DNA of 64,000 bases from Octopus sinensis (GCF_006345805.1 NC_042999.1:135284001-135348000); one strand, 5' to 3'. Positions 24,661 through 63,726 are shown, numbered from the stretch's first letter. The notes: generated from the letters alone by a model not told the origin. Translations and numbers: made by a program.

Positions 24661-24887
24661 CACATATACATAAGTACACAGATACATATGTACACACATG
24701 CATATGTACACACATGCATACATACACACGTGCATACATACATATGCATACATACAGAGATAGGTACACACATACATACACGCATATATATGTACACAGA
24801 CTTGTACATGAATGCATACATAACAGACACATAGACATATGCATACGTACACAGACACGTATAAGTATGTATAGATACACACATATA

Positions 24888-25095: not shown

Positions 25096-25523
25096 TATAT
25101 ACATACATATATATATATACATACACACACATATATACACATACATATATATATACATACACATACATATATATACATACACAAACATATATATACATAC
25201 ACACACATCCATACATATATACACACATAATTATACGCATACATATACATAGATATATACACACACATACATATATATATATATACATACATATACGCAT
25301 ACATATACATACATATATATATATACATACATACATAAATACATATATTTACATACATACATATACATACATACATATACATACATATATACATAAACAT
25401 ACATACATAAATCTTTTGTTAAATATATTCAAAGAGAATATTATATACTGAATTTATATTGAGTGCTCTATTGTATCAAAGTATTAAAGTATTTATATAT
25501 TTAATACGAGCAATTATATATAT

Positions 25524-26361
25524 ATATTATTATTATTAATATTAGGAAATCAATATCGAAACTCCTCAGAAAGATATACACATGTGAAAATAATTGTTGT
25601 ATTAAAAATATATGTAAATATGTATAAGTATAAATATATAATGTATATGACAGTTTAAAAGTTTTGAATTAATTATTTAAAGCATCTTACGCTCGTTTTA
25701 CAGAAGAGTTGTCCCTATAATGAAACCCTATATTGATAAGCATTTATAGACAACGCTTCTGCTCTTCAGAGATATAAAATTTGAATTCTGTATAATATAT
25801 CGAATGGTAGTTTTTTTTTCTTTTTAAATTTGAAGTAAAACTATCAAATGGTGTTTGTTTGAAAGATAAAAGATAAATCAAATATTACTGCTTTTGATGA
25901 GAGTCTTTAAATCCATTCCTTGGTTATTCTTCTGCAATAATCCATAATATTCATATGTAAAATCCTTTATATTATCTTGTATTCCAAATATAGTTCATAT
26001 ATATAACTATATATGGATTTAAAGACTCTCATCAAAAGCAGTAATTTTTAATTTTAATTTATCTTTCAAACAAACACCATTTTATATCTCAGAAGAGCAG
26101 AAGCGTTGTCTATAAATGCTTATCAATATAGGATTTCATCATAGGGACAACTCTTCTGTGAAACAATCGTAAAATGCTTTAAATATTTAATTCAAAACTT
26201 TTAAACTGCCATATACACTATATATTTATACTTATACATATTTACATATATTTTTATACCTATTTATATATCTATATATTTTTAATACAACAATTATTTT
26301 CACACGTGTATATCTTTCTGAGGAGTTTTGATATTGATTTCCTAATATTAATAATAATATA
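25524..26361. mobile_element. Fold-back element with about 350-390 bp inverted arms and a 96-bp loop
   Basis: 25524-25916 is the reverse complement of 26013-26361. The left arm has an extra about 70 bp; inner block attactgcttttgatgagagtctttaaatccat matches perfectly. Confidence 0.85.
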
Positions 26362-27152
26362 CATACACACATACAAACATATACATATATACATACATAT
26401 GCACACACACACTTATCAAACATCATGAATTTGTCCATTGTCACTTTAACTTCTGATGAAATAACTTTTAAAATACAAAATTTTGTCAAAAATGTTAAGA
26501 GTAAAGCTTGTTGTATGTGACACATGGTACCAGTATTGGAAGTTTCAAAGTGTCTAGTTAAAAAAATTAATTAAATAATCTATATGTCAAATTGAATAGA
26601 TCTGAAATGGATAAAAAGCAAAGTCGACCTTAGTGGAATTTGAGTTCAAAACATAAACACAGGCAAAATAACATTGAGCATTTCGCCTGGTGCGCTAATG
26701 TTTCTGCCAGCTCGCCGCCTCAGAATGTAAACATTCATTTTAGCAATATATTCTTTAATATTCTTATTGTTAAGTGTTACTCCCTTACATGAAATTTCGT
26801 AGTATTTCAACCCATAACTTTTATTCTACTAATTTTTGTTCAATGAGACTAATGACTCTGAATTCCTCATACACTTAAAGCCTAAGAAAAGTATACTTTT
26901 ATTTTAAAATTAAAAAGTTTATGTTCATTGAAGGTGAATAGGTGCCTTATTGCGCCCCTTGTGGTCGCAGATATTTTTATGTAACTTTTCTTCTACTGAA
27001 TAAATCTCAAACTATTTGTGCCAGTGTAGCTGAGCACGTGTCCTCTTTAAAACTGTTAACAGCTTGCAATTTAGTTGAGAATTGAATTAGTGGTGAAGCT
27101 TGGAAGCTGCTGTGATTAAGAATATATTCAACTACTATGGTGGTTGAATGAT

Positions 27153-27197
<45 letters not shown>

Positions 27198-27441
27198 TAT
27201 ACAAACACACACACACACACATGCATGCATATATATACATGCTCACACACATGCATATATACACATGCTCACACACACACACGCATATATACACATGCTC
27301 ACACACACGCATATATACACATACTAACACACACATGCATATATACACATTCTAACACACAAATGTGCATATACACACATTCTAACACACAAACGCGCAT
27401 ATATACACATTCTAACACACAAACGTGCATATATACACATA

Positions 27442-28443
27442 TGTAGCGGTATCTGACATCCTCACTGTTTGAGAGACACGGCAGGAATGATCTCGTTTGA
27501 GATTACAGCCATCTTTGGCCAAGTTGTTCCTGTTGTGTCCACTTATCTGATTGGTTGACATGTGGCGCGATTTGTCTCTACTTATTTCGCGCCACTGTCC
27601 AAAGCCAACCAATCACGGCCTTTGGTTAAGGTCCCTTTTCCTAGGCTCTGTTGAGCCACCTTTCTTGTATATAAAGGATTGTTCTCAGTATACTTGGTCT
27701 TTGACTCCAGACCTTCTAAGGTCTAGTCACTGACCACAGAGCTACTCAACATGTTTCAGTTCCAGCGACTGACGATTGCTCCTGCTACAACCAGTGACGA
27801 CGCTAACATACACCAGCACCGCAGAACGTCTTCTATCTCCGCTGCCGTCGTCACCATCATTGTACCAACTTCAAGTCGTCTCTACCATCATCCACTTTAG
27901 ATATGTACACACCAACTTCACAGACCCACGCTGTTAGAGTGAATCCCTTCACCACGTATAACAGTCCATCTGAAGAATTCTATATTAGGAGAACCAGCTC
28001 GGCGATTGAGACCACAACTGCGGCTTGACAATATTCGCCCAACCGGTCTCCGCCCGAGACACATCTTGATATGGAACTCTTACATATCGTGTACCTTATG
28101 AACTGTAAACCAATTTCCATCATTAACTCTACACTCTGTGCTTTCTGTGTCACATGCATTCACCCTCATTTGTATCTGTCACACACACGAACACACAGAC
28201 ACAAACACTTGTTGCATGCACACATACACAACACTTGCTAGCACTCACAACCCTCTAACCTTAACACCTTTTAAATAAAATCTTATCTTCTCTCAAACAG
28301 TGGAACGGCTTGTCATCACTCATCTATATTCTGTTGGCACTGCATTGTATAAATTGTATTTATGGCTTATCTTATTTCATTAGGGATGCGGCCGAGTGAC
28401 TTACCTATGTCGCCAACCTCCACATACGGTCGTATTTCCTACA
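27442..28443 (+). mobile_element. Solo LTR (1002 bp), probably Gypsy/Ty3-type
   Basis: TGTAG...CTACA termini, 4-bp TSD CATA on both sides, CCAAT at 27609, TATATAAA at 27668, AATAAA at 28274. Confidence 0.82.
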
Positions 28444-29735
28444 CATACTAACACACCCACACGCATATAAACACATACTAACACACACACGCATATATAC
28501 ACATACTAACACACTCACACACAGATACACACACACGCTCGTACCCACAGGCACAGATACAAACACACGTTCGTACTCAGATGCATAGATACATACACAC
28601 ACACGCTCGTACGCAAACACACAGATACATGTTCGTACCTAGACACACAGATGCAAACATGCTCATGCCCAAACGCACAGATACATACACACACAGATAC
28701 ACACATCTGGATATACACGCATGAATGCACACACATACATCTAGATACACACACACATCTTGATATACATGCGCATGCACATACACACACATCTAGATAT
28801 ACACGTGCATACACACATCTAGATGTACAAGCATGCATGCACACACAGATCTAGATGTATACATGTGTGCACACGCATCTAGATATAGACACGTGCATGC
28901 ACACACACACATCTAGATATAGACACGTGCACACACACACATACATCTAGATATACACACGTGCACGCACAACATACATGTAGATATACACACGCGCATG
29001 CACACATCTAGGTATACACACGCACATCTAGATACATGCAGGCGCACGCAAACACACATCTAGATACACACACACGCACGCACACTCATGTAGATACACA
29101 CGCGCGCACGCATACACTCATCTAGATACACACACGCGCACGCACACATCCAGATATACACACACGCACATCCAGATATACAAATGCACACGCACACATC
29201 AAGATATACACACGTGCACGCACACATCCAGATATACACACGCGCACGCACACATCCAGATATACACACGCACACATCCAGATATACACATGCACATGCA
29301 CTCATCTAGATGTACACAAGAGCACGCACACATCTAGATATACACATACACACACACCTAGATATATACACGCACAAACATCTAGATATGCACACACACA
29401 AACCTCTAGATATATACACGCGCAGACATCAAGATATGCACACGCACAAACACATCTAGATATCACACATGCACAGACCAAGATATTCACAAACATCTTC
29501 ATATAGACACACACATGTAGATACACACACACACACATCTAGATATATACACACAACCACACACGCACACACAGTAGATATACACACACACATGCACACA
29601 GTACATACATGTGCACACAGTCGATATACAAACATACACATGTACAGTAGATATACACACACATAAATACATATATATATACATACTTATATAAACATAT
29701 ATATATATACGTACATATATGCACATATAAAAATG

Positions 29736-29767
<32 letters not shown>

Positions 29768-30649
29768 TATAAAAAAGTATATATATATATGCACATATAT
29801 ACATGTATATATATATATGCACATATATACATGTATATATATATATGCACATATATACATATGCATATATATATGCACATATATACATATGCATATATAT
29901 ATACATACTTATCTATACATATATACATATGCATATATATATACATACTTATCTAAACATATATATATATACATACTTATGTATATATATATATACATAT
30001 GCATGTATATATACATACTTATCTATATATATATACATACTTATATATACATATATACATATGCATATATATATACATACTTATCTATACATATATACAT
30101 ATGCATATATATATATATACATACTTATCTATACATATATACATATGCATATATATATATATACATACTTATCTATACATATATACATTTGCATATATAT
30201 ATATACATACTTATCTATACATATATACATATGCATATATATATATACATACTTATCTATACATATATACATATGCATATATATATATACATACTTATCT
30301 ATACATATATACATATGCATATATATATATACATACTTATCTATACATATATACATATGCATATATATATATACATACTTATCTATACATATATACATAC
30401 TTAACTATACATATATACATATGCATATATATATATATACATACTTATCTAAACATATATACATATGCATATATATATACATACTTATATATACATATGC
30501 ATATATATATATACATACTTATCTATATATACATATATATATACATATGCATATATATATATATACATACTTATCTATACATACATATATATATACATAT
30601 ATATATACATACTTATCTATACATACATATATATATACATACTTATCTA
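28444..30649. repeat. Compound minisatellite (TCTAGA-cored about 24-30 bp units, then 40-42 bp cttatct units)
   Basis: Directly visible; cttatct recurs at 30210, 30252 and 30294. Confidence 0.93.
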
Positions 30650-30749
30650 NNNNNNNNNNNNNNNNNNNNNNNNNNNNNNNNNNNNNNNNNNNNNNNNNNN
30701 NNNNNNNNNNNNNNNNNNNNNNNNNNNNNNNNNNNNNNNNNNNNNNNNN
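30650..30749. other. Assembly gap (100 N)
   Basis: Exactly 100 N, typical placeholder for a join of unknown size. Confidence 0.99.
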
Positions 30750-32071
30750 TATGGCATGTCTTTCTCGCATACACTCTAAGGAATAGAGTCTTAATCTCTT
30801 GAGTCTTTCCCAATAGCTTATATGCTGCATAGAGGCTATCTTCTTCGTGTAGCTTCGTTGGATTGCCTCAAGTTCTGAGATTAATTTGACACTGGTTGGT
30901 GACCATAGCTGAGAGCAATAGTCAAAGTGGCTTAGGACAAGTGTCCTCCAGAGGACCATCATGGTTTCCTGGTCTCTTGTTCTAAAAGTGCTAAGAATCC
31001 ATCTGGTCAGATGCCTACATTTCATTACCAATTTAGCAACATGTACATGAAAGATTGCATCATTACTCATGTAAATACCCAGGTCTTGCACTGATTGTGC
31101 CTCTAGGATTGCAATCCCTCCAGGTCCAGTGTATTTATTGGGTATTGCATTTAGTTTTGCATGCTGATAGCATAAAGCTTGAAACTTTTCAGCATTGAAC
31201 TGCATGCTATTCTTTTCAGCCCACTTGTATATTTCGACCAGCTCACATTGCAGGTGAAGTGTCTTCAGGGTTCTGTATTACCTGTGAAACTTTTGTATCA
31301 TCTGCATAACTTGTGATCATGGCTCTCTGTGTGGCTGAGGGCATGTCTGAGAGGGTCATTATGAACAGCAGTGGTCTCAAAACAAGGCCTTGCGGAACAC
31401 CGCTCACTATTTGTGTGTTATTGGAGGTGGCCCCATTGGCTACTACCACCTGACTTCTATCCTTCAGAAAGTCATGAAGACATTCTCCCAATTTTCCAAC
31501 TATGCCAAGATCACGCAGTTTGTGACATATCATTCCATGACCGACTTTATCAAAGGCCTTTTGAGTGGTTGAGCAGTTGTTTCAGCACCCAGTCATAGTG
31601 TTGTAAGAGCTGAGTTAGGCAGCTTCTTCCTGGTCGGAAACCATGTTGGGTGTCAGGCAGCAAGTCATTTTCTTCAAGGAAGGCGATTAGTTTCCTTCTG
31701 ACTATTTGTTCCATGACCTTGCTGATGTGTGAGATCAGAGAGATAGGTCTGTAGTTCTTGGCCTCCACTCTGCTACCTCCTTTATGAATAGGGCATATTT
31801 TACCCTCCTTCAGTTTTCTTGATAGGACTCGCTTACATACTCTTAGAAGGTTTGCTGGGAATCCATTAGGGCCAGTAGCTGAGTTTGGGTTCATTTCTTC
31901 TATAGCCCTTATTACATCGTCTTCCTTTATATTGATGTAATCAATCATCATTGCCTTTGATTTTATACCTGCAGTGGTAAAGAAGTCAGTTGGATTGCTG
32001 ACTTGAAAGTGCCCTAGGGGTGGAGTGAAAATACTTTTGAATTGCTCATTTAGTATTTCACTTATCCTCAT
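30750..32071 (-). mobile_element. CR1/L2-group LINE reverse transcriptase remnant, 5'-truncated
   Basis: NYRPISLISHISKVME, QHGFRPGRSCLTQLL, SGVPQG, SYADDTKV, MQFNAEKF, DYCSQLWSP; contains frameshifts and deletions. Confidence 0.93.
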
Positions 32072-32770
32072 TATATACACATATATACACACATATATAT
32101 ATATATACACACATATATATATACACACATATATATATACACACATATATATATACACACATATATATACACACATATATATACACACACATATATATAT
32201 ATATACACACACACATACACACACATATACACACATATACATATACACACATATACATATATATACATACACACACATATACATATATACATACACACAC
32301 ACATACATATATACATACACACACACATACATATATACATACACACACATATACATATACACACACACATATACATACACACACACATATATATATATAC
32401 ATATACACACATACATATATACATATGCACACATACATATATACATATGCACACAAACATATATACATATGCACACATACATATATACATATGCACACAT
32501 ACATATATACATATGCACACATACATATATACATATGCACACATACATATACACACATACATATATACATATACACACATACATATATACATATACACAC
32601 ATACATATATACATATACACACATACATATATACATATACACATACATATACATATACACACATACATATACACACATACATATACACACATACATATAT
32701 ACATATACACACATACATATACACACATACATATACACACACACACACATACATATACACACATACATAT

Positions 32771-32803
<33 letters not shown>

Positions 32804-33680
32804 CACAGACATATATACGCATATATATACAGACATATATACGCATATATATACAGACATATATACGCATATATATACATATACACACATACGCATATAT
32901 ATACATATACACACATATATACACATATACACACATATATATATACACACACACATATATATACACACACACATATATATACACACACACACATACATAT
33001 CTATATACACACACACACATCTATATATACATACACACACATATATATATACATACACACACATATATATACATACACACACATATATATACACACACAC
33101 ATATATATATACACACACACATATATATACACACACACACATATATATACACACACACATATATATATACACACACACATATATATATACACACACACAT
33201 ATATATATACACACACACATATATATATACACACACATATATATATATACACACATATATATACACACATATATATACACACACATATATACACACACAC
33301 ATATATACACTCACACATATATACACACACATATATATACACACACATATATATACACACACATATATATATACACACACACACACATATATACATATAT
33401 GTATGCATATATGTATATATATATATGTATATATATATGTATATATATATATGTATACATATATGTATATATATATATGTATACATATATGTATATGTAT
33501 ATATATATATATGTATACATATATATGTATACATATATGTATACATATATATATACACATATATATACACATATATGTATACATATATGTATACATATAT
33601 GTATACATATATACACATATATATACACATATATATACACATATATATGTATACATATACAAATATATATGTATATACAT
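32072..33680. repeat. (AC/AT)-derived microsatellite/minisatellite block
   Basis: Directly visible. Confidence 0.95.
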
Positions 33681-34062
33681 ATCATCATCATCGTTTAGCG
33701 TCCGTTTTCCATGCTAGCATGGGTTGGACGGTTCTACTGGGGTCTGTGAAGCCGGAAGGCTTCATCAGGCCCAGTCAAATCTGGCAGTGTTTCTACGGCT
33801 GGATGCCCTTCCTAACGCCAACCACTCCGAGAGTGTAGTGGGTGCTTTTTACGTGCCACCCGCACAGGTGCCAGACAGAGCTGGCAAACGGCCACGAACG
33901 GATGGTGCTTTTTATGTGCCACCGGCACGAGGGCCAGGCGAGGCTGGCAACGGACACGAAACGGGGTGGTGCTGGCAACGGTCGCGAAACAGAAGGTTAT
34001 CTTACATGCCACCGGCACTGGTAACCCATCTGCAATTTCCATTGATCGATTTCAATTCTGAT
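33681..34062 (-). mobile_element. SINE family C
   Basis: catcatcatcgtttagcgtccg... homologous to 6927-7335. Confidence 0.8.
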
Positions 34063-34509
34063 CCATATACGTATACATATACAAATATATATGTATATAC
34101 ATATACATATATGTATACATATACAAATATATATGTATATACATATACATATACAAATATATATGTATATACATATACAAATATGTATGTATACATATAC
34201 AAATATATATGTATACATATACAAATATATATGTATACATATACAAATATATATGTATACATATACAAATATATATGTATACATATACAAATATATATGT
34301 ATATACATATACAAATATATATGTATATACATATACAAATATATATGTATACATATACAAATATATATGTATATACATATACAAATATATATGTATATAC
34401 ATATATGTATACATATACAAATATATATGTATATACATATATGTATACATATACAAATATATATGTATATACATATATGTATACATATACAAATATATAT
34501 GTATATACA

Positions 34510-34870
34510 ACATATCCGATGTCTAGCCTCATGGCACCTATGTATGTGGCACATAAAAAAAACAACATGTACCGTATGCCAGCCTCGTCTATGTCGGTAT
34601 GGCACATAAAAAAACACATCCGAGCGTGGCCGTCTGCCAGCCTCGTCTGGCACCTATGTATGCACATATAAAAACATACATCCGAGCGTATATAGCCTCG
34701 TCGGCACCGTGTCGGTGCACATATACCCAATACACTCTATGTTGTATAGGGCATCAAGCTGTAGAAATATGCCACATCTGATATGGTGCACTTAGGGCTT
34801 CCAGACAGTTGAACCGTACAACCATATAGCATGGAAACGGACGTTAAACGATATGATGATGATGATGATA
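34510..34870 (+). mobile_element. SINE family C copy, heavily corrupted, inverted relative to 33681
   Basis: Ends ggacgttaaacgatatgatgatgatg; body colinear with 52232-52580 but with many indels. Confidence 0.7.
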
Positions 34871-37100
34871 TATGATACATATACAAATATATATGTATAC
34901 AATATGTAACATATACAAATATATATGTATATACATATAGTATACATATACAAATATATTGTATACATATATGTATACATATACAAATATATATGTATAC
35001 ATATACATATACAAATATATATGTATATATATATACATATACAAATATATATGTATATATATATACATATACAAATATATATGTATATATATATACATAT
35101 ACAAATATATATGTATATATATATACATATACAAATATATATGTATATATATATACATATACAAATATATATGTATATATATATACATATACAAATATAT
35201 ATGTATATATATATACATATACAAATATATATGTAACATATATGTATACATATACAAATATATATATACATATACATATACAAATATATAGTATACATTA
35301 CATATACAAATATATATGTATACATATACATATACAAATATATATGTATACATATACATATACAAATATATATGTATATATATATATACATATACATATG
35401 TATATATATATATGTATACATATACATATGTATATACATACATATACATATGTATATACATATATGTATACATATACATATGTATATACATATATGTATA
35501 CATATACATATGTATATACATATATGCATACATATATACATATATGCATACATATACATATGTATATACATATATGCATACATATACATATGTATATACA
35601 TATATGCATACATATACATATGTATATACATATATGCATACATATGTATATACATATATGCATACATATGTATATACATATATGCATACATATATATATA
35701 CATATATGCATACATATGTATATACATATATGCATACATATATATATACATATATGCATACATATATTATACATATATGCATACATATATATATACATAT
35801 ATGCATACATATATATACATATATGCATACATATATATATATACATATATGCATACATATATATATACATATATGCATACATTATATATATACATATATG
35901 CATACATATATTATACATATATGCATACATATATATAACATATATGCATACATATATATATACATATATGCATACATATATATATACATATATGCATACA
36001 TATATATATACATATATGCATACATATATATATACATATATGCATACATATATATATACATATATGCATACATATATATATACATATATGCATACATATA
36101 TATATACATATATGCATACATATATATATACATATATGCATACATATATATATACATATATGCATACATATATATATACATATATGCATACATATATATA
36201 TACATATATGCATACATATATATATACATATATGCATACATATATGCATATATGCATACATATATATATATATACATATATGCATACATATATATATATA
36301 TACACATATATGCATACATATATATATATATATACATATATGCATACATATATATATATATACATATATGCATACATATATATATATATACATATATGCA
36401 TACATATATATATATATACATATATGCATACATATATATATATATACATATATGCATACATATATATATATATATATATATGCATACATATATATATATA
36501 TATACATACATTATGCATACATATATATATATATACATATATGCATACATATAATATATATATATATATGCATACATATATAATATACATATATGCATAC
36601 ATATATATATATATATATGCATACATATATATATATATATATATACATACATATATATATATATATATACATATATAATATATATATACATACATATATA
36701 TATATATACATACATACATATATATATATATACATACATATATATATATAATATACATACTATATATATACATACATATATATATATACATACATATATA
36801 CATACATATATATATATACATACATATATATATATACATACATATATCATACTATATACATATATGCATACATATATACATATATGCATACATATATACA
36901 TATATGCATAATATATACATATATGCATACATATATACATATATGCATACATATATACATATATGCATACATATATACATATATGCATACATATATACAT
37001 ATATGCATACATATATACATATATGCATACATATATACATACATACATATATACATACATACAGATATACATACATACATATATACATACATACATATAC

Positions 37101-37131
<31 letters not shown>

Positions 37132-37884
37132 ATACATACATATATATATACATAATATATATATACATACTATATATATACATACATATATATATACATA
37201 TATATAACATAATATATATATACATCATATATATATACATACATATATACATACATATATATATACATCATATATACATACATATATACATACATATATA
37301 TATACATACCTATAATATACATACATATATATATACATACATATATATATACATACATATATAATACATACATATATATATACACATATATTATACAACA
37401 TTATATATATACATACATATATACATACATACATACATTAACATATACATATTTGCATACATATATATATCATCATATATATATACATACATACATATAT
37501 ATACATACATACATACATATATATACATACATACATACATATATTATATACTAATACATACATAATCATTATATATATACATATATGCATACGTATATAT
37601 ACATATATGCATACATATATATATACATATATGCATACATATATATACATATATGCATACATATATATACATATATGCATACATATATATACATATATGC
37701 ATACATATATATACATATATGCATACATATATATACATATATGCATACATATATATATACATATATGCATACATGTATATATACATATATGCATACATGT
37801 ATATATACATATATGCATACATATATACATATATTTATATATATATATATATACATATATATATAATATATATAACACATATGC

Positions 37885-37931
<47 letters not shown>

Positions 37932-38037
37932 TACATATATATATACATATATATATGCATACATATATATTATACATATATATATGCATACATATATACA
38001 TATATTATATATATATATATATATATATAATATATGC

Positions 38038-38088
<51 letters not shown>

Positions 38089-38765
38089 GCATACATTATA
38101 TATATATATATATGCATACATATATATATACATATATGCATACATATATTATACAATATGCATATATATATATGCATACATATATAATAGACACATATGC
38201 ATACATATATACATATACATATATGCATACATTATATATATAATACATATATGCATACATATATATATATATATACATATATGCATACATATAATATATA
38301 ATATAACATATATGCATACATATATATATATATACATATATGCATACATATATATATATATATACATATATGCATACATATATATATATACATATATGCA
38401 TACATATATATATATACATATATGCATACATATATATATATATACATATATGCATACATATATATATATATACATATATGCATACATATATATATATACA
38501 TATATGCATACATATATATATACATATATGCATACATATATATATACACATATGTGCATACATATATATATATACACATATGTGCATACATATATATATA
38601 TACACATATGCATACATATATATATACACATATTCATACATATATATATACACATATGCATACATATATATATATACATATATGCATACATATATATATA
38701 TATATACATATATGCATACATATATATACATATATGCTTACATACATATACATATATGCATACAT
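34871..38765. repeat. Minisatellite block (30-bp unit near 35.0-35.2 kb; 24-bp CATATATGCATACATATATATATA unit near 35.9-36.2 kb)
   Basis: Periods read directly from aligned lines. Confidence 0.95.
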
Positions 38766-39678
38766 TCTTCTAGTTTTCAATTATATATTTACTTTAAGTA
38801 TAATACACAGATTGCTATTTTGAACTAATACTGCGTCTGCTGCCCAAAATTCATTTTATGCAGCCAGCCAGCTAATTCCAATATTGATATTAGCTGATTT
38901 TATTTTAGCATGATGATTGCCAGTGGACACCTGTGACTGACAAAGTCCCTAGAGGTAGAATGACACATTTCGCAATGCCGCCTCCACTACTGGATGATTA
39001 TCATCTGCTAGTGATATAGTTCTGTATTTTCTAACACTATATATGTATACTGGTACAAATTCCCCAGTTTATCTGGCTTTCAATGTTGTATCTAATTATG
39101 ATACAGAGATTGCCATATAGCATCATGTTGATCATTTAAGTCCATGTTCCATGCTGGCATGGGTTGGATGGTTTGACAGGATCTGATATGTTCAAGGGTT
39201 GGATTGTGCTCCAGTGTTGCTTTGGTATGGTTTCTATAGCCAAATCCTCTTCTTAATACCAAGCACTTTACAGTGTATACTGGCTTCTTTTTTCATGCAA
39301 CCAACACTAGTGAGGTCTCCTTGCAGCTTGCAAGTCCACAAAACCTAAGGGGAGGGGCTTTATGCTAGCAAGTGAGAGTTAAAGAAAGAAAAGAAAGAGT
39401 TGGTATAGAGTGGGTTCTTGTCGGAGGGGAGCTACTTGGCTACTTACATTTAGGAGTGAGTTAGAAATGAAACCAATACATATACATACATATATATTAC
39501 AATATATACATTTGCACTATATATATATATATGGAGAGAGAGAGAATGTTATAGGTATATATATATATGTACACACACATAAATATATAGATACATATAA
39601 ATGCAGACATTTATATGTATATTATATATCCATCCCTACCTCCCATTGTATATATGATGATAATGATGGTTATATATA

Positions 39679-41366
39679 CTAGCAAATGCACCTGTCCTTT
39701 TGACAGTGTAATTTATTATAATGGCGCACTCCTTTGGACAGTTTAAGTTGAGTTAGCCCACAGTTAGAAGTCGTTTCAAATTGATAAATGTAAAATGTAT
39801 AATTACCAATTTTATTTACAGTTTATTATATGGCATTAAGCACCCAAGGTAATGAATGAAGTTTTTTTAACACAAACTTGGCAGTTAGTAATAAATGAAA
39901 GTCCATGAAATGAGATCACAATAGCAGTAGGCATTAGGGATCCTATATCTAACCTGAAGCATTTTGTAGCATGTAGTTATTTTATTCATAATGCCCAACA
40001 CAACCGCATTGGAGTCTTTTTCAATGATAAACAAAAGCAAACATTTATAGCAAACACGCAAATAGAATAATGGCATGTACAAAAATAGATGTCAAATAGA
40101 TGTCAAAGTATGCTTATGAGTGAACAGCATGCAAGAAGTAAGAAGGGGCATTGAAGGTAATGTTCTGCTAACAGCAATCACAGAAATGAAGCAAAATATC
40201 AACGAAATGCTTGTAGGAAGTCTGACTGCTAATGGCCACAGTTTGGCGTAGATGTGAAGATCACAGTAGAGGAGTAACTACTGTAGGGGTGATTTGTAGA
40301 TGACATTTTTGGTTTTTCCTTCAGGGGCATAGATGAATAAGTTATCTGGATGGCCAACTCTGGAACAACCGACATAGGACTGTCCATGTGAAAAGCATGA
40401 TGTTCAAAGGTCCAATCTGATAACTTTCAGCGATTGACCTTGTGCTTTGTTAATTGTCATGACGAAGCTGAGTTTGAGAGGAAACTGGTGTACAGTAGGA
40501 GCAGTCTGCTAGGATGGGCGGAATTTTTGGAACAAAAATGGTATCGTTTTTGCCATGTCCTGTGATAATTTGGGCTTCAATGACATGGCCCATCATTTAT
40601 TTGACCACAAGGTGAGTTCCATTGCATAGTGTGGGTGTGTTTAGATTGCATAGGAGGATGACAGGGCAACTGACTTTTAAGTGAAGTTCATGGGGAGGGT
40701 GTCCTGGAGGATGTTGGGAGTTGAGAAATTCTGTTGGAAAGTGTGTAACCTGACAGAGGTTGGTAACAGTGTCAGCTGATCTGTAACAACATTCTCAAGA
40801 AGGCAGCTTACTGAGTAAGTTGTAGTTAAGAGTGATGACACCTGCATTTGTAGGTGCAAGAACAGCCCTGTGCTAATGTGCAAATATCGGCAGTTAGCAG
40901 TGAATGGACATTGTAAAAACTTATAATTGTCACAACTTTGTATGAGTAGAAGCAGAGAATATAATATGGATTAATGTCTGAAGGCATCTAAAAAATAATT
41001 GAAAGTTGATTTAAATTGCATGGCTACTTCAAGGAAGCACTAATGTGCAAATATTGGCAGTTTACAGTGAATGGGCATTGTAAAAACTGTAGTAGAAGAT
41101 AAAGTGAAAGTAGCATAGCTACGCCATCAAGAGTAATGTCCCTTGAAGAACGATTGTTGGTATTTGTTATTTACCTAATAGGAGTTTTCATCCCCTAGGG
41201 GCGGCATTACTCATTATGTGGAAAATTTGAAGAGTCTATGACCATCTCTCGAACGTAAGTGATGTATGCTCTCAGCGTGTGCGAAATCAGATGAAAGATA
41301 TTGATTTTAAGGAGGATCAAGAAAAAGGCCTACACACACACACCTTCCATTTTATTATATATAAGA
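39679..41366 (-). mobile_element. Helitron deletion derivative (1.69 kb) retaining a decayed PIF1-like helicase C-terminus
   Basis: 5' TCTTATATATAATAAAA; 3' hairpin CACTGTC-AAAAG-GACAGGTG followed by CATTTGCTAG. 40340-40720 reads PHELHLKVSCPVILLCNLN...LCNGTHLVVK...QFPLKLSFVMTINKAQGQSL...CFSHGQSYVGCSRVG. Confidence 0.9.
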
Positions 41367-41799
41367 TATATATGCATATTTATTTACATATATTCATACA
41401 CAATATACATATGCATGTTGCAGACACATTTTTAGGGTAAACACTTGTGTGCTGAAGATACTGCTACTCTCCTCTGATTGCAGGAGTTGATATCTCATCA
41501 GGCAGTGAAACAGCTATTTAGGTCTTTTGACCCCTTCCATTGCAACATCAGAGGTGCTTGGGGATCACCCACCAATGTAAATGACATGACTGACACAACA
41601 GCATGAACTTTATTGATGGAGATGATTGAGCCAGATGTTTCTGTCATCTGACCCAGACACACACACACAAACATGTAAAGATGATCAACTCATGCTAGCA
41701 TGAATGACAGATGCAATACACACTCTTAATATTGTCTCTCTCTCTCTCACCTCTTATTCTCAATTGATCACCTGACGAGGCACAGAAAAAAACACAATA

Positions 41800-42330
41800 C
41801 TGTCCCTTCCATCTTATTGATCCCCTTTGTAAAGTGATTAGATATCCCTCCTTCCCTCTTTACACCCATACCTCATTCTTATGTCCTGTCAACAAGAACC
41901 CTCATTTTTGCTTGCCTCTGGCTACATTCACCTCTATGTACTTTTGCCCTGCTTTACCCCTATCAGCTTGTCTCTCCCCCACCACACAGTCTTGTAACTT
42001 TTACCTCCCACTTTCACTTACCTCCCCCTACCTCATTCTGGCCCTGTCAACAGTTTTATTTTGCTGCTTTTCACCTTTTCAGTATTGTGAATCATAACAT
42101 CCTCTCTTCTGACCCACTTCCTTACCACCTCTCCCAATTCATATTTATTAATGACCACCCTCCACTCTTTTTAACTATTTCTCCCGGCTTTTCCCACACT
42201 CTTACAATTTTCACCATCAACCCTTCCTGATCTTGTCTCCAGTCTCTCTCTTTTATTCATTCCTGCTGTACCTTGAGGGTATGCCGACACCATCTTTATC
42301 TCTTTATTTCACCACCATCTTTATCTCTCT
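41800..42330 (-). mobile_element. Possible very decayed RTE-like endonuclease region
   Basis: Purine-rich minus strand like the RTE at 60.4 kb; only a short MVSAYPQG motif recognised. Confidence 0.3.
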
Positions 42331-42794
42331 TTTTGGCATCACCCCAATAACTCCCACCCACCCTTAACGTGGGGTAATCACATTGTTTCTGTTCCGCTTT
42401 CATTCTTTAATTATCAATATCTTGCGTATAGTTGCCTCCTTCTCTTCTGTACTCCCTCTCAGTTAAGGGGATATTTTAGTCTAATGGGTTACATAGCAAA
42501 TTCATACCCTGTACATTCTGTAAAGTGGTTGGCGTTAGGAAGAGCTTTCTGCCATAGAAACCATGCCAAAACAAACTCCAGAGCACGATGCAGTCCTCTG
42601 ACTCATCAGACATTGTCGAACCGTCTAACCAATACCAGCATGGAAGACGAACGTTAAATGATGGTACACATCCATATTAGAAATATTCACATACACACAT
42701 ATGTATATACAAATATATGTACATACACACACATTGGAACACATGCATTTTTAAAATAATATATATATTGTTTTAGTATTAAATATATAATACA

Positions 42795-42853
<59 letters not shown>

Positions 42854-43110
42854 TTAGTATTAATATATAATTCACGATATATATATATATATATATATAT
42901 GTCGCTAGATAGATGCGTGTATTATAATTATATAACATATATTATGCGTGCCTATGTACATCTAGTTTCGTATGGCTACATAATATACGACATTGATTTT
43001 TCAAGGTTACAAGGAAAAGACTCTGGAACTGATCTGACATCAGAAAACATAAATGAGTACACTGATACACATATATTAATATACATATAATATATACGTG
43101 GACACACATC

Positions 43111-43144
<34 letters not shown>

Positions 43145-45699
43145 ATGGGGTATGTCTATTCGTATTTCCCAATGTAGTAGTCATGTAACTAACAATTCCA
43201 CTACTTGGTAAATCGCTACAGCCGAAGTCTTCATATGTTGTAATTACTGTTAATTATTGTAATTATCCAACTACGCCTCGCATCAGAGAAAGAGAAAATA
43301 CGTTCAGATCAAACATTCGTAAAGCAATATTGGGATTTGGAAATCTATAATAAAATCATAAACAGGAATGTAATCAGGCATAAGGAAGACACCAAAGGAA
43401 GTGGGTTATTCAATGAAGAAAGGAAGGGGAGGAATGATTATAATAAATCGAACGGCTGAAATGACGTGTGAGTGAGTGAGTGTGTGTGTGTGTGTGTGTG
43501 TCTGTGTGACAGAGAGAGGGGGATAGAGAGGGAGGGAGAGAAATCTTTGGGACAAGCAATTACATAATAAGTATGCATAAATTCGATGATAGGATTAAAA
43601 AAAAACGATAGAAAAAAAAAACGGCAAAATAAATTTTTCAGTGAATTCGAACTCCGACAATTTGATTAAATGGAAAGGGCCACAGTTATAAAATATATAA
43701 CAATTTAATAAATTCTAGAATGTCTAGTATCTCCTTGGTACTCAATAATAGAGGAAATGACATTTTAAAAAGAATAAAAGAGAGAAAAAAAAATTGAAAA
43801 CTAGGCGTATTAAATTCACAGCTACCACTAAACATCCTACTTTGACTGGGTGTTGGGAGTGTTCTAAAATTTTAGAAGCGAAATAAAAACACATTTGGTT
43901 ATGAAACAATGACCACTAACTAAAACAGACATTAAATCATTCTGCATTTTTTTCATTGCCAGTAAGCCACATTATGACTTTATATGCGTGTGTATGTGTG
44001 TATTATAACACCTACACAGGATCTATCTATCCTTCCATCTTTCTATCATATATACATACACAAAATACCTAACACTGTTACAATTTGCACTGATCACCAG
44101 TTGGAAAGGTGAACAGATGGGAAAATGATCGGTTGAGGAATTTAGGTTTGTGCTGTAGCAGCAGCGATTAACAGGCAGAGAAGCAAAAGTGAAAGTACGA
44201 CACCAGAAGCAGCGGTGGTAGTAGTAGTAGTGGTGGTGGTGGCGGCGGCGGCGGAGGCAGCTGCTTGTACTAAATAGTAGTAGCATTAGCAAACAGTAGG
44301 ATTTCTCCGCTGCAAAAGGTGGGTGGTTGGGCTAATAAAACATTATAATACTTCCACATTCCACAATTTGCATAGTCGCATACTGATTGCTCATATATCA
44401 AAGACAAAATTAAAATCGGGGGATTTCGATAGGACAAAAAAATCTGTAAGGGTGACTGGCAAAACTGTAGATGTATGTATGGCAAAGATAAAAAACAGAA
44501 ATAGAATAGTCATTAGTGACAACAGTATTTTAGTTCACAATAAATGTATTGTAATTTCGTCTATCTGCAACTAAAAAGATAAAATATATCAACCAGTGGG
44601 AATAAACTAGAAAGTGTAGCAACAGATAAGCTGGGATGGTGTAACCTTGCAGGACACACACACAGACACACATTCTTTATTTCTGCCATAATAAAGATAT
44701 TTTGATACCTATGCTATGATAAATTAGTAATTTAACATAACTACTTCACGCATTTAGTTCTATTTCAATACTGGTCCACTTGATTTTTGAAGTAATGCGT
44801 GTATGTGTTTTCAGAGCTTGTAAAAGTTAAAGAAAAAAAATACGCTTCTAAATTCTGAAAACTCAGATGAGCAATTAAATGAAATTTATTAATTCATAGA
44901 ACAAAAACAGGTGTCCAATCGCACGAGAAATTAAGATTACGTAAATAGAGTCAATTCGACAATAAAATAGCTTCAAATGAAATAAACAGAAAATAAATGG
45001 TTAAATGGAATCGAAGTTTTGATTGTGTAGAATCTAATGTTGGATTTGGTTGAATCTAGTTACCGAAAATTATCTTTTTTAATAGTAAACAAGGCATGTT
45101 AACAGTAAATGAAAGAAATAATGAATGCAACAGCGTTAAGTAGTGAAATAGCTGTCTTGATATATTTTTGGTCCTTCGATTCGTGTCTCAATGAATATAT
45201 AATTAGGAGAGCCTCTGCTACTTTCTCTTTCTATTCAATAAAAGATGGTTTCATTTTTTAAAGAATTAATGATAAAAAGGAGCTAAATGTTTTAGTTAGG
45301 CATAAGACATGATTTTGGAAAGAAGAAACATATCTGTACAAAAATTATATTTGTAAGAGAAAGATAAAAGTTACTTAATAAAATGTTGCTGTAACAAGAT
45401 AAAAAAAAAAATAGAACGGACCAAATGAAATTAAAGTGTGATCGACTGAAGAATCAATCGATCAACATAAAAGACGAGAAAAATGCATAATTTACAGAAG
45501 GAATTTAGCTATTAACAATAGTAAGCAGTTAATTATAAACTATCTGGACCGCCGATCTTTGACAGATCGATGTGTAGCTGATTAGGTGGTAACATTAGGT
45601 AGATTATATGAGGTGGAAAGAAGGTTTGAAAGAGGCGACAGTAGAGAAAACAGAATAAGTAACCGTGTGAGGAAATGAGAGTAAAACACAACCACATAC

Positions 45700-45801
45700 C
45701 CAACTAATTATCCGAATAATAACTTGTGGCCGTTGGAAGAATACCAGAGGGTCGAATGCAACACCAGCTTTGCCAGCACCATAAGCACCTCCACTCGACA
45801 T
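45700..45801 (-). CDS. SYNGR: Synaptogyrin, coding exon 1 (34 aa)
   Basis: MSSGGAYGAGKAGVAFDPLVFFQRPQVIIRIISW matches the synaptogyrin N-terminus (GAYGAGKAG.AFDP). The phase-0 donor TGG|GTATGT falls where vertebrate SYNGR exon 1 ends. Confidence 0.93.
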
Positions 45802-46207
45802 CTTGGATTTGTTTCAATAACTACGCAAAACACTGTGACGTCAACAATTATGTGCAATAAATTAAGAACTCAAGCCGAGACGCAATACGTCAAAGTTAAA
45901 ATTGTTTATTTTTTTTTTTATTGTATTGAAAATTGATTATTTTTAAATATAAATTACATTTAGACAAATAATTTAAAAAAGTAAAGTAATATTTTATTCG
46001 GATGATTTCGCCTCAAGAGAAATGTTTGTGTTGCCACGTAATACTCGCATAGTTATGATGTAGTATTCATACTTGGCATACTATTCCCTCTTTAGCTTGT
46101 GTCGGTTTGGCACAAACTTCAGCCTGCTTCAAGGTTTCTTTATTACAAAAACACCATTAAAGTAGTTTTTTAAAAAATTGATTTGGCAGTTTTATTAACT
46201 GTTGGCT
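45802..46207. promoter_or_regulatory. Shared divergent promoter / 5' UTR region (406 nt)
   Basis: Lies between two divergent ATGs, is repeat-free and locally CpG-retaining; TGACGTCA at 45836-45843, TACGTCA at 45886-45892, GCCACGTA at 46033-46040. Confidence 0.7.
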
Positions 46208-46366
46208 ATGGAAGGGGAAGAAAATATTTGTGTTGTCTGCAGCGATGAGATAACCATTTTTGCTGTAGGTGTCTGCGATCATCCCATCTGCTACAAGTGC
46301 TCCACACGACTGAGAGTCTTATGTATGGAGAATTACTGCCCCACATGTCGTTCAAATCTTCCTGAA
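46208..46366 (+). CDS. ZNF598: ZNF598 exon 1, C3HC4 RING
   Basis: MEGEENICVVC...VCDHPICYKCSTRLRVLCMENYCPTCRSNLPE; donor GAA|GTGAGT, phase 0. Confidence 0.95.
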
Positions 46367-51235: not shown

Positions 51236-51484
51236 GTCGCTTTTATACAAAAATTGGCAAAGTTTGAAGATATACCAAACAAAAACAAGATGTTGGTCAA
51301 TTCACAGTTCAACCTACTTTTTGAAAATTCTGAGATAGAGAAACGGTTCAACCAGCTAATTGAGCATCGATGTCCGTCTTGCCTGCCTAATAAACAAACG
51401 GAATATAAGTTTAGCATGCTTCGTTCACATCTTAGAAACGTACACAAACTTTATTATTGTGATCTGTGTGTGCAACATTTAAAA
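51236..51484 (+). CDS. ZNF598: ZNF598 exon 2 (83 aa, includes a C2H2 finger)
   Basis: ttgcag|GTC...HRCPSC...LRSHLRNVHKLYYCDLCVQHLK|gtatga; phase 0-0. Confidence 0.93.
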
Positions 51485-57633: not shown

Positions 57634-57848
57634 ATCTTTACGTCAGAAAGAAAGCTTTACACTCAAGCTGAACTTGCTCATCATCGTAGTGTAGGGGATC
57701 CCGATGATTCTTCCTATCGAGGTCATCCACTATGTCAGTTTTGTCAAAAGCGTTACATGGATATTGATGATCTCTATCGGCATTTGCGTAAAGATCACTT
57801 GTTCTGCCATTTTTGTGATGCAGACAACATCTCTAATCAATACTACGA
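57634..57848 (+). CDS. ZNF598: ZNF598 exon 3 (C2H2 fingers)
   Basis: ttgtag|IFTSERKLYT...GDPDDSSYRGHPLCQFCQKRY...LYRHLRKDHLFCHFCD...QYY GA|gtaagt; phase 0-2. Confidence 0.95.
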
Positions 57849-59764: not shown

Positions 59765-59982
59765 TGAATACAGCGTGTTAAAGGAACATTTTCGAAAGGA
59801 ACATTATTTATGTGAAGAGCCCGAGTGTGCCAATGCACAATTCACTCATGCATTTCGCACTGATATTGACCTTAAAAAACATATCACTCAGGAACATGGG
59901 CAAAATCTTACCAAGGCCCAAGCACGACAGGCACGCACTATTGATTTAGATTTCCAACTGCCTCCACGCATCAGAGCTAGAG
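59765..59982 (+). CDS. ZNF598: ZNF598 exon 4
   Basis: ttttag|T EYSVLKEHFRKEHYLCEEPEC...FTHAFRTDIDLKKHITQEH...ARQARTIDLDFQ...AR G|gtaaga; phase 2-1, in frame with exon 3. Confidence 0.95.
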
Positions 59983-63635: not shown

Positions 63636-63726
63636 ATATTGGTGGTCGTCCAGACTACAGAAATGAAGCAAGTTCTCGTGGAAGATATTCTAAAGCTCAA
63701 AAAGGAAGGGCATATTTTGATGGAAG
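63636..63726 (+). CDS. ZNF598: ZNF598 probable exon 5 (R/G-rich linker)
   Basis: ttgcag|AT...DIGGRPDYRNEASSRGRYSKAQKGRAYFDG AG|gtaaac; phase 1 start continues exon 4 with an open frame. Low sequence conservation, so the support is mainly splice and frame logic. Confidence 0.72.

What the first reader, a model, noticed from the sequence alone, without database searches (positions are those of the whole stretch)
45700..46366. Synaptogyrin and ZNF598 are head-to-head neighbours, echoing the human SYNGR3-ZNF598 adjacency
Seen: divergent ATGs 406 nt apart. Known: SYNGR3 and ZNF598 are adjacent on human 16p13.3 (GFER-SYNGR3-ZNF598-NPW), there tail-to-tail, and coleoid genomes are heavily rearranged. 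Inference: an ancient bilaterian micro-linkage that survived with a local inversion, now placing a synaptic-vesicle gene and the ribosome-collision sensor on one promoter. That could couple ribosome quality control to neuronal expression.
Basis: partly seen in the sequence, partly recalled or inferred. Interest (0 to 1): 0.75.

Follow-up and report, generated by a model that had tools for sequence, protein, structure and literature searches.

The report
Ancient synaptogyrin–ZNF598 head-to-head gene pair
In this octopus sequence the first exons of a synaptic-vesicle gene (synaptogyrin) and the ribosome-collision sensor ZNF598 point away from each other across 406 bases; clams, abalone, cuttlefish and an acorn worm have the same arrangement, so it is an old, ordinary conserved divergent gene pair, not a new octopus inversion.

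Summary
Synaptogyrin exon 1 lies at 45801..45700 (- strand) and ZNF598 exon 1 at 46208..46366 (+ strand), with 406 nt between the ATGs. The window is Octopus vulgaris or a very close relative.

- **Linkage is ancient.** The same head-to-head pair, 365-406 nt ATG to ATG, occurs in Argonauta, a cuttlefish, the clam Mercenaria and the abalone Haliotis. It also occurs head-to-head, 4.7 kb apart, in the hemichordate Ptychodera.
- **Mammals differ.** A whale has SYNGR3 tail-to-tail with ZNF598, and the human order is GFER-SYNGR3-ZNF598-NPW.
- **Polarity is reversed.** Head-to-head is the likely ancestral state and the mammalian arrangement is derived. No single inversion converts one into the other.
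- **The pair is dispensable.** It is absent within 10 kb in amphioxus, a nemertean, Priapulus and Tribolium.

The mollusc spacer carries an invariant palindromic CRE (TGACGTCA) 25-35 nt from the synaptogyrin ATG. In octopods the spacer is about as conserved as the exons (82% against about 53% for introns).

Best reading: a conserved ancestral microsyntenic pair held together by a compact divergent promoter. Start sites, co-expression and any coupling of ribosome quality control to neurons are untested. It is a new member of a known kind, of moderate interest.

The parts
45700..45801 (-). Synaptogyrin exon 1: ATG at 45801-45799, 34 codons, phase 0, GTATGT donor at 45699
   Evidence: PDB 8a6m_A Synaptogyrin-1 E=1.1e-8. 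100% identical to P0121 and P0122. The exon-1 boundary is the same in cuttlefish, clam, abalone and Ptychodera.
45802..46207 (.). 406-nt spacer between the two ATGs; candidate compact divergent promoter
   Evidence: Octopus-Argonauta identity is 82% here, against 52-61% in the flanking introns and 53% for shuffled sequence. The spacer is 365-406 nt in five molluscs. Local CpG o/e is about 1 against 0.38 for the whole window. There is no Rfam family and no RNA-structure signal.
45836..45843 (.). Full palindromic cAMP-response element TGACGTCA, 35 nt from the synaptogyrin ATG and 372 nt from the ZNF598 ATG
   Evidence: It is the only copy in the 64 kb window. It is invariant and in register (25-35 nt from the ATG) in Octopus, Argonauta, Acanthosepion, Mercenaria and Haliotis.
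45855..45864 (.). AT-rich TATA-like element (CAATAAATTA) 12 nt from the CRE
   Evidence: ATAAAT(T/A)A follows the CRE in cephalopods and the clam, and TATAAAT follows 36 nt after it in abalone. The Octopus-cuttlefish blastn match runs from exon 1 only as far as 45864. Its orientation and use are not known.
46031..46050 (.). Second conserved block (TTGCCACGTAATACTCGCAT) with an ACGT core, 177 nt upstream of the ZNF598 ATG; candidate ZNF598-proximal element
   Evidence: It aligns with TGACGTATTAC in cuttlefish and TGATGACGTTT in clam and abalone. Clam and abalone also share TTGCACAAC and a downstream TATAAAA. The cephalopod-to-clam/abalone correspondence is only moderately significant.
46208..46366 (+). 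ZNF598 exon 1 (53 codons, start of the RING finger), GTGAGT donor
   Evidence: Pfam PF25447 E=1e-26. 100% identical to P0001.
51236..51484 (+). ZNF598 exon 2
   Evidence: AG/GT boundaries. The spliced translation equals P0001.
57634..57848 (+). ZNF598 exon 3
59765..59982 (+). ZNF598 exon 4
63636..63726 (+). ZNF598 exon 5. The last large exon lies beyond the window end.
   Evidence: In L001 the final exon starts about 4 kb further on.
1..45699 (-). Synaptogyrin intron 1 (partial, longer than 45.7 kb), filled with microsatellites and transposon remnants
   Evidence: tblastn with P0121-P0123 finds no synaptogyrin exon. Tandem repeats and a gap are present. Transposon domains are present.
42966..45279 (.). 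Four non-coding blocks conserved between Octopus and Argonauta in the promoter-proximal part of synaptogyrin intron 1 (42966-43028, 43241-43472, 44054-44417, 45184-45279); candidate enhancers
   Evidence: blastn of the window against L002. No comparable blocks occur in ZNF598 introns.

Best explanation
The locus is a conserved ancestral microsyntenic pair in 5'-5' (head-to-head) orientation. The single invertebrate synaptogyrin gene and the single-copy ZNF598 gene have sat back-to-back since at least the last common ancestor of molluscs and hemichordates, that is, the bilaterian ancestor.

In molluscs the two start codons stay only 365-406 nt apart. That spacer behaves as one constrained regulatory unit. 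It holds an invariant palindromic CRE with a TATA-like element next to the synaptogyrin start. A second ACGT-core block lies about 200 nt away, nearer ZNF598.

The most likely mechanism is two back-to-back core promoters inside one short, probably nucleosome-free, region (inferred). Their elements are shared or interleaved, so any breakpoint or insertion between the genes damages at least one of them. That would preserve both adjacency and spacing, even through the coleoid genome reshuffling.

The neuron-enriched expression of synaptogyrin would then come from extra elements, for example the conserved blocks in its very long first intron. ZNF598 would stay broadly expressed (inferred).

The mammalian tail-to-tail SYNGR3-ZNF598 arrangement is a derived remnant of the same linkage. 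It could arise by two single-gene inversions, or by tandem duplication of the pair followed by loss of the outer copies (inferred).

Shown: the gene identities, the arrangement, its phylogenetic spread, and the sequence conservation of the spacer and the CRE. Inferred: start sites inside the spacer, CREB/ATF binding, shared regulation, and selection as the cause of retention.
For: - **Head-to-head pairs and ATG-to-ATG gaps:** Octopus window 406 nt; O. vulgaris assembly 405 nt; Argonauta hians 401 nt; Acanthosepion pharaonis 374 nt; Mercenaria mercenaria 365 nt; Haliotis asinina 394 nt. All the flanking ATGs were verified.
- **The neighbours are true synaptogyrins** with the same exon structure.
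- **Hemichordate:** Ptychodera flava has the pair head-to-head 4.7 kb apart, and its neighbour begins MDGGGAYGAGKAG....
- **Mammal:** in the fin whale, SYNGR3 exons lie on the opposite strand 3.6-4.4 kb beyond the ZNF598 stop, which is tail-to-tail. Human order is in PMC7170856.
- **Same scaffold or chromosome by contig-length fingerprint**: Aplysia (568 kb), Elysia (105 kb), Patella, Gigantopelta, the chiton Liolophura, Mya, Pinctada, and Sinanodonta with consecutive locus tags 035001/035002.
- **CRE:** TGACGTCA is invariant and in register in all five molluscs. It occurs once in the 64 kb window and only 1-3 times per 27-77 kb mollusc locus. Chance placement within +/-10 nt in both clam and abalone is of order 4e-6 (inference).
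- **Spacer constraint:** 82% identical between Octopus and Argonauta, while the introns are at the shuffled baseline.
- **Framework:** conserved pairs are enriched for 5'-5' orientation and spacers under 1 kb, explained by shared cis-regulation (Irimia et al. 2012, PMC3514665).
- **Copy number:** only one synaptogyrin cluster was found for cephalopods.
Against: - No transcription-start, chromatin or expression data were available, so 'one promoter' is not shown.
- The AT-rich spacer does not allow the TATA-like elements to be oriented.
- The CRE-then-TATA order would fit rightward (ZNF598) transcription as well as, or better than, synaptogyrin transcription.
- The pair is not essential. It is absent within 10 kb in Tribolium, amphioxus, the nemertean Tubulanus and Priapulus. 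In mammals the genes do not share a promoter at all.
- A 400-nt spacer is a very small target for breakpoints, so adjacency alone could persist passively.
- The ancestral-orientation claim rests on a single deuterostome lineage whose spacer is ten times longer.
- The two proteins have no known functional link.
Confidence: 0.65

Rival explanations
1. Passive retention. The two genes simply have abutting but independent promoters. The pair survives because a 400-nt spacer is almost never hit by a rearrangement breakpoint, not because the genes are co-regulated. The CRE serves synaptogyrin alone.
For: Several lineages lost the pair without obvious harm, and mammals run both genes from separate promoters. 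In Ptychodera the spacer has grown to 4.7 kb and holds a foldback or MITE-like insertion. The most conserved part of the spacer, the only part alignable between octopus and cuttlefish, hugs the synaptogyrin ATG. Synaptogyrin is neuron-enriched in squid (PMC9839350), whereas ZNF598 is a general translation factor (established knowledge).
Against: Passive retention does not explain why the spacer stayed at 365-406 nt for over 500 My while neighbouring introns grew to 45 kb and more and filled with repeats. It also does not explain why the whole spacer is as conserved as coding sequence between octopods. A second block is conserved between clam and abalone near ZNF598, so both sides are constrained within one short interval.
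Confidence: 0.28
2. One reading: an ancient linkage that a local inversion in the coleoid lineage turned head-to-head. This newly placed both genes on one promoter and coupled ribosome quality control to neuronal expression.
For: The genes are adjacent in both octopus and human or whale. Coleoid genomes are heavily reorganised (PMC9023564). The spacer is short enough to be a bidirectional promoter.
Against: The same orientation and spacing occur in a bivalve and a gastropod and the same orientation in a hemichordate, so nothing was inverted in coleoids. A single inversion cannot interconvert head-to-head and tail-to-tail (logic). There is no evidence of any kind for neuronal regulation of ZNF598.
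Confidence: 0.05
3. Coincidence: the adjacency in cephalopods and in vertebrates arose independently, by chance.
For: About two of roughly 20,000 neighbouring pairs would be expected to coincide between two shuffled genomes (rough inference). Amphioxus, a nemertean, a priapulid and a beetle lack the pair.
Against: The pair occurs in three mollusc classes with conserved spacing and a conserved CRE, and also in a hemichordate and a mammal. Both genes share a chromosome or scaffold even where they are not adjacent: Tubulanus, the crinoid Antedon and the millipede Chamberlinius.
Confidence: 0.02

Closest known systems
Conserved ancestral microsyntenic pairs (CAMPs) in 5'-5' orientation, e.g. HSPD1-HSPE1 (Irimia et al. 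2012, PMC3514665)
   Same: Two non-paralogous genes, head-to-head, with a spacer under 1 kb. Both adjacency and orientation are kept across phyla, and the explanation is shared cis-regulation that makes breakpoints harmful.
   Different: HSPD1 and HSPE1 are functional partners with an experimentally shown bidirectional promoter and high co-expression. Synaptogyrin and ZNF598 have no known functional link, and neither their promoter nor their co-expression has been tested. Their pair was also lost in several lineages and re-oriented in mammals. The pair is not named in the main text of that paper, and its supplementary lists could not be read.
Human 16p13.3 GFER-SYNGR3-ZNF598-NPW neighbourhood
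   Same: The same two gene families are immediate neighbours (PMC7170856; fin whale locus).
   Different: The orientation is tail-to-tail (shown in the whale; for human it is from my own knowledge), so no promoter is shared. SYNGR3 is one of four vertebrate paralogues, whereas the octopus gene is the single pro-orthologue.
CRE-plus-TATA proximal promoters of CREB/ATF target genes (e.g. somatostatin, c-fos; established knowledge, recalled)
   Same: A full palindromic TGACGTCA lies about 12 nt from a TATA-like element and close to a coding start. It is conserved far beyond the surrounding sequence.
   Different: No binding, inducibility or start-site data exist here. The element sits between two divergent genes, and which of them it serves, if not both, is unknown.
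Metazoan microsyntenies retained in coleoid cephalopods (Schmidbaur et al. 2022, PMC9023564)
   Same: An ancient linkage that survived the coleoid genome reorganisation. That paper reports retained ancient blocks as co-expressed and enriched for synaptic-vesicle functions.
   Different: Those are larger multi-gene blocks. Neither ZNF598 nor synaptogyrin appears in that paper's text or in its held supplements.

Membership tests
ZNF598/Hel2 E3 ubiquitin ligases | N-terminal ZNF598-type RING finger | tested here: met
   PF25447 RING_ZNF598 E=1e-26, 93.5 bits against a cut-off of 27, residues 5-92 of the spliced exon 1-4 product.
ZNF598/Hel2 E3 ubiquitin ligases | C2H2 zinc fingers after the RING, and a C-terminal PAH_ZNF598 region | tested here: met
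   PF23230 zf-C2H2_13 scores 32 bits against a cut-off of 27 within the window-encoded part. PF23202 PAH_ZNF598 is recorded for the full annotated protein P0001, whose last exon lies outside the window.
ZNF598/Hel2 E3 ubiquitin ligases | Ubiquitination of 40S proteins on collided ribosomes | not testable with these tools
   This is a biochemical property. It is inferred only from orthology: 46-57% identity over 280 aa to arthropod, mollusc and deuterostome ZNF598.
Synaptogyrin (MARVEL-domain tetraspan vesicle proteins) | Conserved cytoplasmic N-terminus GGAYGAGKAG-FDP leading into the first transmembrane helix | tested here: met
   PDB 8a6m_A Synaptogyrin-1, E=1.1e-8, query residues 3-34. 100% identical to annotated cephalopod synaptogyrins.
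Synaptogyrin (MARVEL-domain tetraspan vesicle proteins) | MARVEL domain with four transmembrane helices (PF01284) | tested here: inconclusive
   The window holds only exon 1, and the 34-residue piece gives no Pfam hit. PF01284 is recorded for the gene's annotated product and for the 219-aa orthologues. The exons that encode it lie more than 45 kb away, outside the window.
Bidirectional (divergent) promoter gene pair | Head-to-head orientation with less than 1 kb between the genes | tested here: met
   406 nt between the ATGs and 365-405 nt in four other molluscs.
Bidirectional (divergent) promoter gene pair | Both transcription start sites inside the spacer, less than 1 kb apart | not testable with these tools
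   No 5'-end data could be reached. The one transcript contig fetched (L004, cuttlefish) starts 2 nt before the ATG and is uninformative.
Bidirectional (divergent) promoter gene pair | Co-expression, or elements that act in both directions | not testable with these tools
   There is no expression resource among the tools. The literature says only that squid synaptogyrin is neuron-enriched yet detectable in all clusters (PMC9839350).
Conserved ancestral microsyntenic pair (Irimia et al. 2012) | Adjacency of non-paralogous genes shared by distant metazoan clades | tested here: met
   Mollusca in three classes, Hemichordata and Mammalia.
Conserved ancestral microsyntenic pair (Irimia et al. 2012) | Conserved relative orientation | tested here: inconclusive
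   Head-to-head in molluscs and Ptychodera but tail-to-tail in the whale. The pair is absent in four other lineages.
cAMP-response element (CREB/ATF site) | Palindrome TGACGTCA in a promoter-proximal position, conserved across species | tested here: met
   Window 45836-45843, the only copy in 64 kb, invariant in five molluscs.
cAMP-response element (CREB/ATF site) | Occupancy by CREB/ATF and cAMP- or activity-dependent transcription | not testable with these tools
   This needs ChIP or CUT&RUN and reporter or induction assays.

The most novel reading that the evidence does not exclude
The CRE-bearing 400-nt spacer is a truly shared, activity-responsive (cAMP/CREB) bidirectional promoter. It has co-regulated a synaptic-vesicle protein and the ribosome-collision sensor since the bilaterian ancestor. 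Neurons that raise vesicle-protein output after activity would then raise translation-surveillance capacity at the same time. Vertebrates uncoupled this link when the pair was re-oriented.
Probability: 0.08. Interest if true: 0.7.

Novelty: new member of a known kind. Interest (0 to 1): 0.4.

Why it matters
This is a clean, datable example of a two-gene linkage that outlived more than 500 million years of change and the coleoid genome reshuffle. Its spacer is small enough (about 400 nt, with one invariant CRE) to dissect completely by experiment.

It corrects the polarity of the event. The octopus keeps the ancestral state and mammals carry the rearranged one.

It gives a compact test case for a general question: are head-to-head pairs kept because they share regulation, or merely because a short spacer is a small target for breakpoints?

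It does not by itself show any functional tie between ribosome quality control and synapses.

Tried and rejected
- **Synaptogyrin exons 2-4 in the window.** tblastn with a recalled SYNGR1 sequence and with P0121-P0123 found nothing. I conclude that intron 1 is longer than 45.7 kb, not that the gene is broken.
- **Pfam on the 34-aa exon.** No hit, because the piece is too short.
- **PDB search with the ZNF598 N-terminus.** No relative.
- **Length filter of the homologue search.** A partial product does not find full-length relatives, so I padded the partial proteins with X and scored only the real residues.
- **Chiton look-up.** P0043 was not on record. Only same-chromosome evidence exists for the chiton.
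- **Whale annotation.** It lists no neighbour. SYNGR3 exons were found by tblastn between N-runs, so only two exons are seen.
- **Non-coding RNA or structured 5' UTR as the cause of spacer conservation.** No Rfam family comes near its gathering score; the miRNA-like hits at 42.7-43.2 kb are simple-repeat palindromes. The fold z-score is -0.37. Rejected.
- **Orienting the TATA-like elements to assign start sites.** Abandoned, because the AT-rich sequence reads as TATA-like on both strands.
- **A possible tiny 5'-UTR intron in ZNF598** (GGT at -78, CAG at -21). Too weak to claim.
- **Literature.** No paper pairs ZNF598 with microsynteny, or synaptogyrin with microsynteny or bidirectional promoter. 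The ZNF598 plus 'bidirectional promoter' hits concern reporter plasmids.
- **Bacterial promoter/terminator scan.** Not used, as it does not apply to an animal genome.

Full report
**What is in the window.**

On the minus strand an ATG at 45801-45799 opens 34 codons (MSSGGAYGAGKAGVAFDPLVFFQRPQVIIRIISW). They end at 45700 in front of a GTATGT donor. The piece matches the N-terminus of human Synaptogyrin-1 in PDB entry 8a6m (E=1.1e-8). It is identical to the first 34 residues of the annotated synaptogyrins of Octopus vulgaris (P0121) and Argonauta hians (P0122).

On the plus strand an ATG at 46208 opens 53 codons that end at 46366 before GTGAGT. With exons 51236-51484, 57634-57848, 59765-59982 and 63636-63726 it gives a product with these properties:
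- it carries the Pfam ZNF598 RING finger (PF25447, E=1e-26);
- its first 280 residues (exons 1-4) are 100% identical to 'E3 ubiquitin-protein ligase ZNF598 [Octopus vulgaris]' (P0001);
- exon 5 also matches P0001 at 100%.

The window is 99.1% identical over its best 21 kb, and 97.4% over a further 5 kb, to O. vulgaris chromosome OX597816.1. It differs by small indels, one of them a single T in the spacer, so it is another assembly or a very close relative.

Only exon 1 of synaptogyrin lies in the window. The remaining 45.7 kb on that side is intron 1. In cuttlefish this intron is 48.4 kb.

**Is the adjacency old?**

I anchored on ZNF598 orthologues and read 10 kb on each side of the gene in annotated genomes.

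| Species | Group | Arrangement | ATG-to-ATG gap or note |
|---|---|---|---|
| Octopus (window) | cephalopod | head-to-head | 406 nt |
| O. vulgaris assembly | cephalopod | head-to-head | 405 nt |
| Argonauta hians | cephalopod | head-to-head | 401 nt |
| Acanthosepion pharaonis | cephalopod | head-to-head | 374 nt |
| Mercenaria mercenaria | bivalve | head-to-head | 365 nt |
| Haliotis asinina | gastropod | head-to-head | 394 nt |
| Ptychodera flava | hemichordate | head-to-head | 4.7 kb |
| Fin whale | mammal | tail-to-tail | SYNGR3 exons 3.6-4.4 kb past the ZNF598 stop |
| Tribolium | beetle | no synaptogyrin within 10 kb | neighbours CIP2A and prominin |
| Amphioxus | cephalochordate | no synaptogyrin within 10 kb | NPHP3 is the divergent neighbour |
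| Tubulanus | nemertean | no synaptogyrin within 10 kb | |
| Priapulus | priapulid | no synaptogyrin within 10 kb | locus contains many N |

All flanking ATGs were checked. The mollusc neighbours are true synaptogyrins with the same four-exon structure. The Ptychodera synaptogyrin begins MDGGGAYGAGKAG and has the same exon-1 boundary.

In the whale, two exons nearly identical to my recalled human SYNGR3 lie on the opposite strand. Their order points toward the 3' end of ZNF598. A clinical deletion report lists the human order GFER, SYNGR3, ZNF598, NPW (PMC7170856).

A cruder test compares the length of the contig that carries each gene.
- **Same scaffold or chromosome:** Aplysia (568 kb), Elysia (105 kb), Patella, Gigantopelta, the chiton Liolophura, Mya, Pinctada, and Sinanodonta (consecutive locus tags 035001/035002). 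Also Tubulanus, the crinoid Antedon and a millipede (8.6 Mb scaffold).
- **Different scaffolds:** Lymnaea and Priapulus.

The linkage is ancient, as proposed. The polarity, however, is the reverse of what was implied. Head-to-head is shared by three mollusc classes and a deuterostome. It is therefore the best candidate for the ancestral bilaterian state, and the octopus has simply kept it. The mammalian tail-to-tail state is derived.

A single inversion cannot link the two states. Inverting one gene gives a tandem pair, and inverting both gives a divergent pair again. Two single-gene inversions would do it. So would a tandem duplication of the pair followed by loss of the outer copies (inference).

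Only one synaptogyrin cluster was found for cephalopods. The octopus gene is thus the pro-orthologue of all four vertebrate paralogues, of which only SYNGR3 kept ZNF598 beside it.

**The spacer.**

Between Octopus and Argonauta the 406-nt spacer is 82% identical, close to the two first exons at 89% and 93%. The adjoining introns are at 52-61%, no better than shuffled sequence at 53%. One continuous 912-nt alignment spans the spacer and both exons.

Across all five molluscs one element is invariant and in register. It is the full palindromic cAMP-response element TGACGTCA, 25-35 nt from the synaptogyrin ATG (window 45836-45843). It is the only copy in the 64 kb window, and each 27-77 kb mollusc locus has only one to three. 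Its landing within about 10 nt of the same place in clam and abalone by chance is of order 4e-6 (inference).

An AT-rich TATA-like element follows about 12 nt further on in cephalopods and the clam. The octopus-cuttlefish match ends just after it.

About 200 nt away, nearer ZNF598, lies a second block with an ACGT core (window 46031-46050). Clam and abalone share an identical TGATGACGTTT, a TTGCACAAC and a TATAAAA there. The cephalopod match to this block is weaker.

Local CpG observed/expected is about 1.0 from 44.75 to 47.5 kb, against 0.38 for the window. This is weak support for a promoter-type region, because simple repeats lower the background. No Rfam family and no unusual RNA fold explain the conservation.

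**Most likely mechanism, and its limits.**

The pattern has four parts: divergent orientation, a spacer under 1 kb, kept orientation, and a highly conserved spacer. Irimia et al. (2012) describe this pattern for conserved ancestral microsyntenic pairs held together by shared cis-regulation, with HSPD1-HSPE1 as the classic case (PMC3514665).

I therefore read the locus as two back-to-back core promoters in one short regulatory region. Their elements are shared or interleaved, so breaks and insertions are selected against. This would explain why the spacer stayed near 400 nt while the neighbouring intron grew beyond 45 kb and filled with microsatellites and transposons.

The four blocks conserved between Octopus and Argonauta in the promoter-proximal part of synaptogyrin intron 1 are candidates for the neuron-specific input. 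Squid single-cell data describe synaptogyrin as a neuronal marker that is nevertheless detectable in all clusters (PMC9839350).

None of the following is shown here: start sites, CREB/ATF binding, or co-expression.

The main rival is passive retention, meaning abutting but independent promoters and a tiny target for breakpoints. It is favoured by the repeated loss of the pair, by its re-orientation in mammals, and by the 4.7 kb spacer in Ptychodera, which carries a foldback or MITE-like insertion.

**Known or new.**

No searchable paper names this pair. It is absent from the text and held supplements of the cephalopod microsynteny study. The supplementary lists of Irimia et al. could not be read, so it may already be catalogued there. 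In kind it is a further member of a well-described class.

**Verdict.**

- Interest is moderate. This is a neat and experimentally tractable example, not a surprise.

Noticed in passing
window 28933-38765: Synaptogyrin intron 1 holds very long AT/AC-rich microsatellite arrays. The largest is 34868-38765, period 12 (ATATATATACAT), about 326 copies. GC falls to 15% with a strong GC skew. A 100-N assembly gap lies at 30650-30749.
   Followed up: partly
window 60745-63140 (+): A LINE-like retrotransposon sits in ZNF598 intron 4. It has interrupted ORFs with a reverse-transcriptase match (RVT_1, 4e-6) and a C-terminal PHD finger (9e-7), plus high GC and GC skew. Further RT fragments lie on the minus strand at 31246-32080.
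   Followed up: partly
window 15376-16364 (-) and 4256-4651 (-): Two decayed mariner/Mos1-type transposase remnants lie in synaptogyrin intron 1 (HTH_48, E=3e-13 and 3.5e-6).
   Followed up: partly
window 50254-50800, 52215-52578 (+); 6938-7303, 33685-33928 (-): An interspersed repeat family with internal subrepeats of about 65 nt. Copies occur in introns of both genes, and related copies occur in Argonauta introns (L002). No tRNA-like part was detected.
   Followed up: partly
window 42966-43028, 43241-43472, 44054-44417, 45184-45279: Non-coding blocks conserved between Octopus and Argonauta (71-84% identity) in the first 3 kb of synaptogyrin intron 1. ZNF598 introns show none. They are candidate enhancers or an alternative promoter.
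   Followed up: no
L001 1-9595 (O. vulgaris GCA_951406725.2); protein P0121: The public O. vulgaris gene model for synaptogyrin gives a 123-aa product with a spurious tail (…GCSHFFGCSEVPFGCR). Argonauta and cuttlefish give 219 aa, so the last exons are missed or mis-called in that annotation.
   Followed up: partly
L005 about 9826-9855 and L006 about 9802-9830 (spacer positions 191-220 and 196-224): Clam and abalone share an identical TGATGACGTTT followed 8-9 nt later by TTGCACAAC, then a TATAAAA. This lies 175-200 nt upstream of the ZNF598 ATG and looks like an ATF/C-EBP-type composite site. Cephalopods keep only an ACGT-core remnant (window 46031-46050).
   Followed up: no
L011 5272-10150 (Ptychodera flava): The 4.7 kb spacer contains long inverted repeats (7589-7781 against 8597-8814), suggesting a foldback or MITE-type insertion. 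The annotated ZNF598 start is probably about 50 codons too early, because the conserved MSKTTDNIQSTCVVCC start lies downstream.
   Followed up: partly
L009 1-10001 (amphioxus): In amphioxus the divergent neighbour of ZNF598, about 0.9 kb away, is NPHP3 rather than synaptogyrin. The head-to-head slot has been taken by another gene.
   Followed up: no
window 46130-46199: A GGT at -78 and a CAG at -21 relative to the ZNF598 ATG are partly conserved (CAGTTTTAT is shared with the clam). They could bound a very short 5'-UTR intron or just be conserved 5'-UTR sequence. Unexplained.
   Followed up: no
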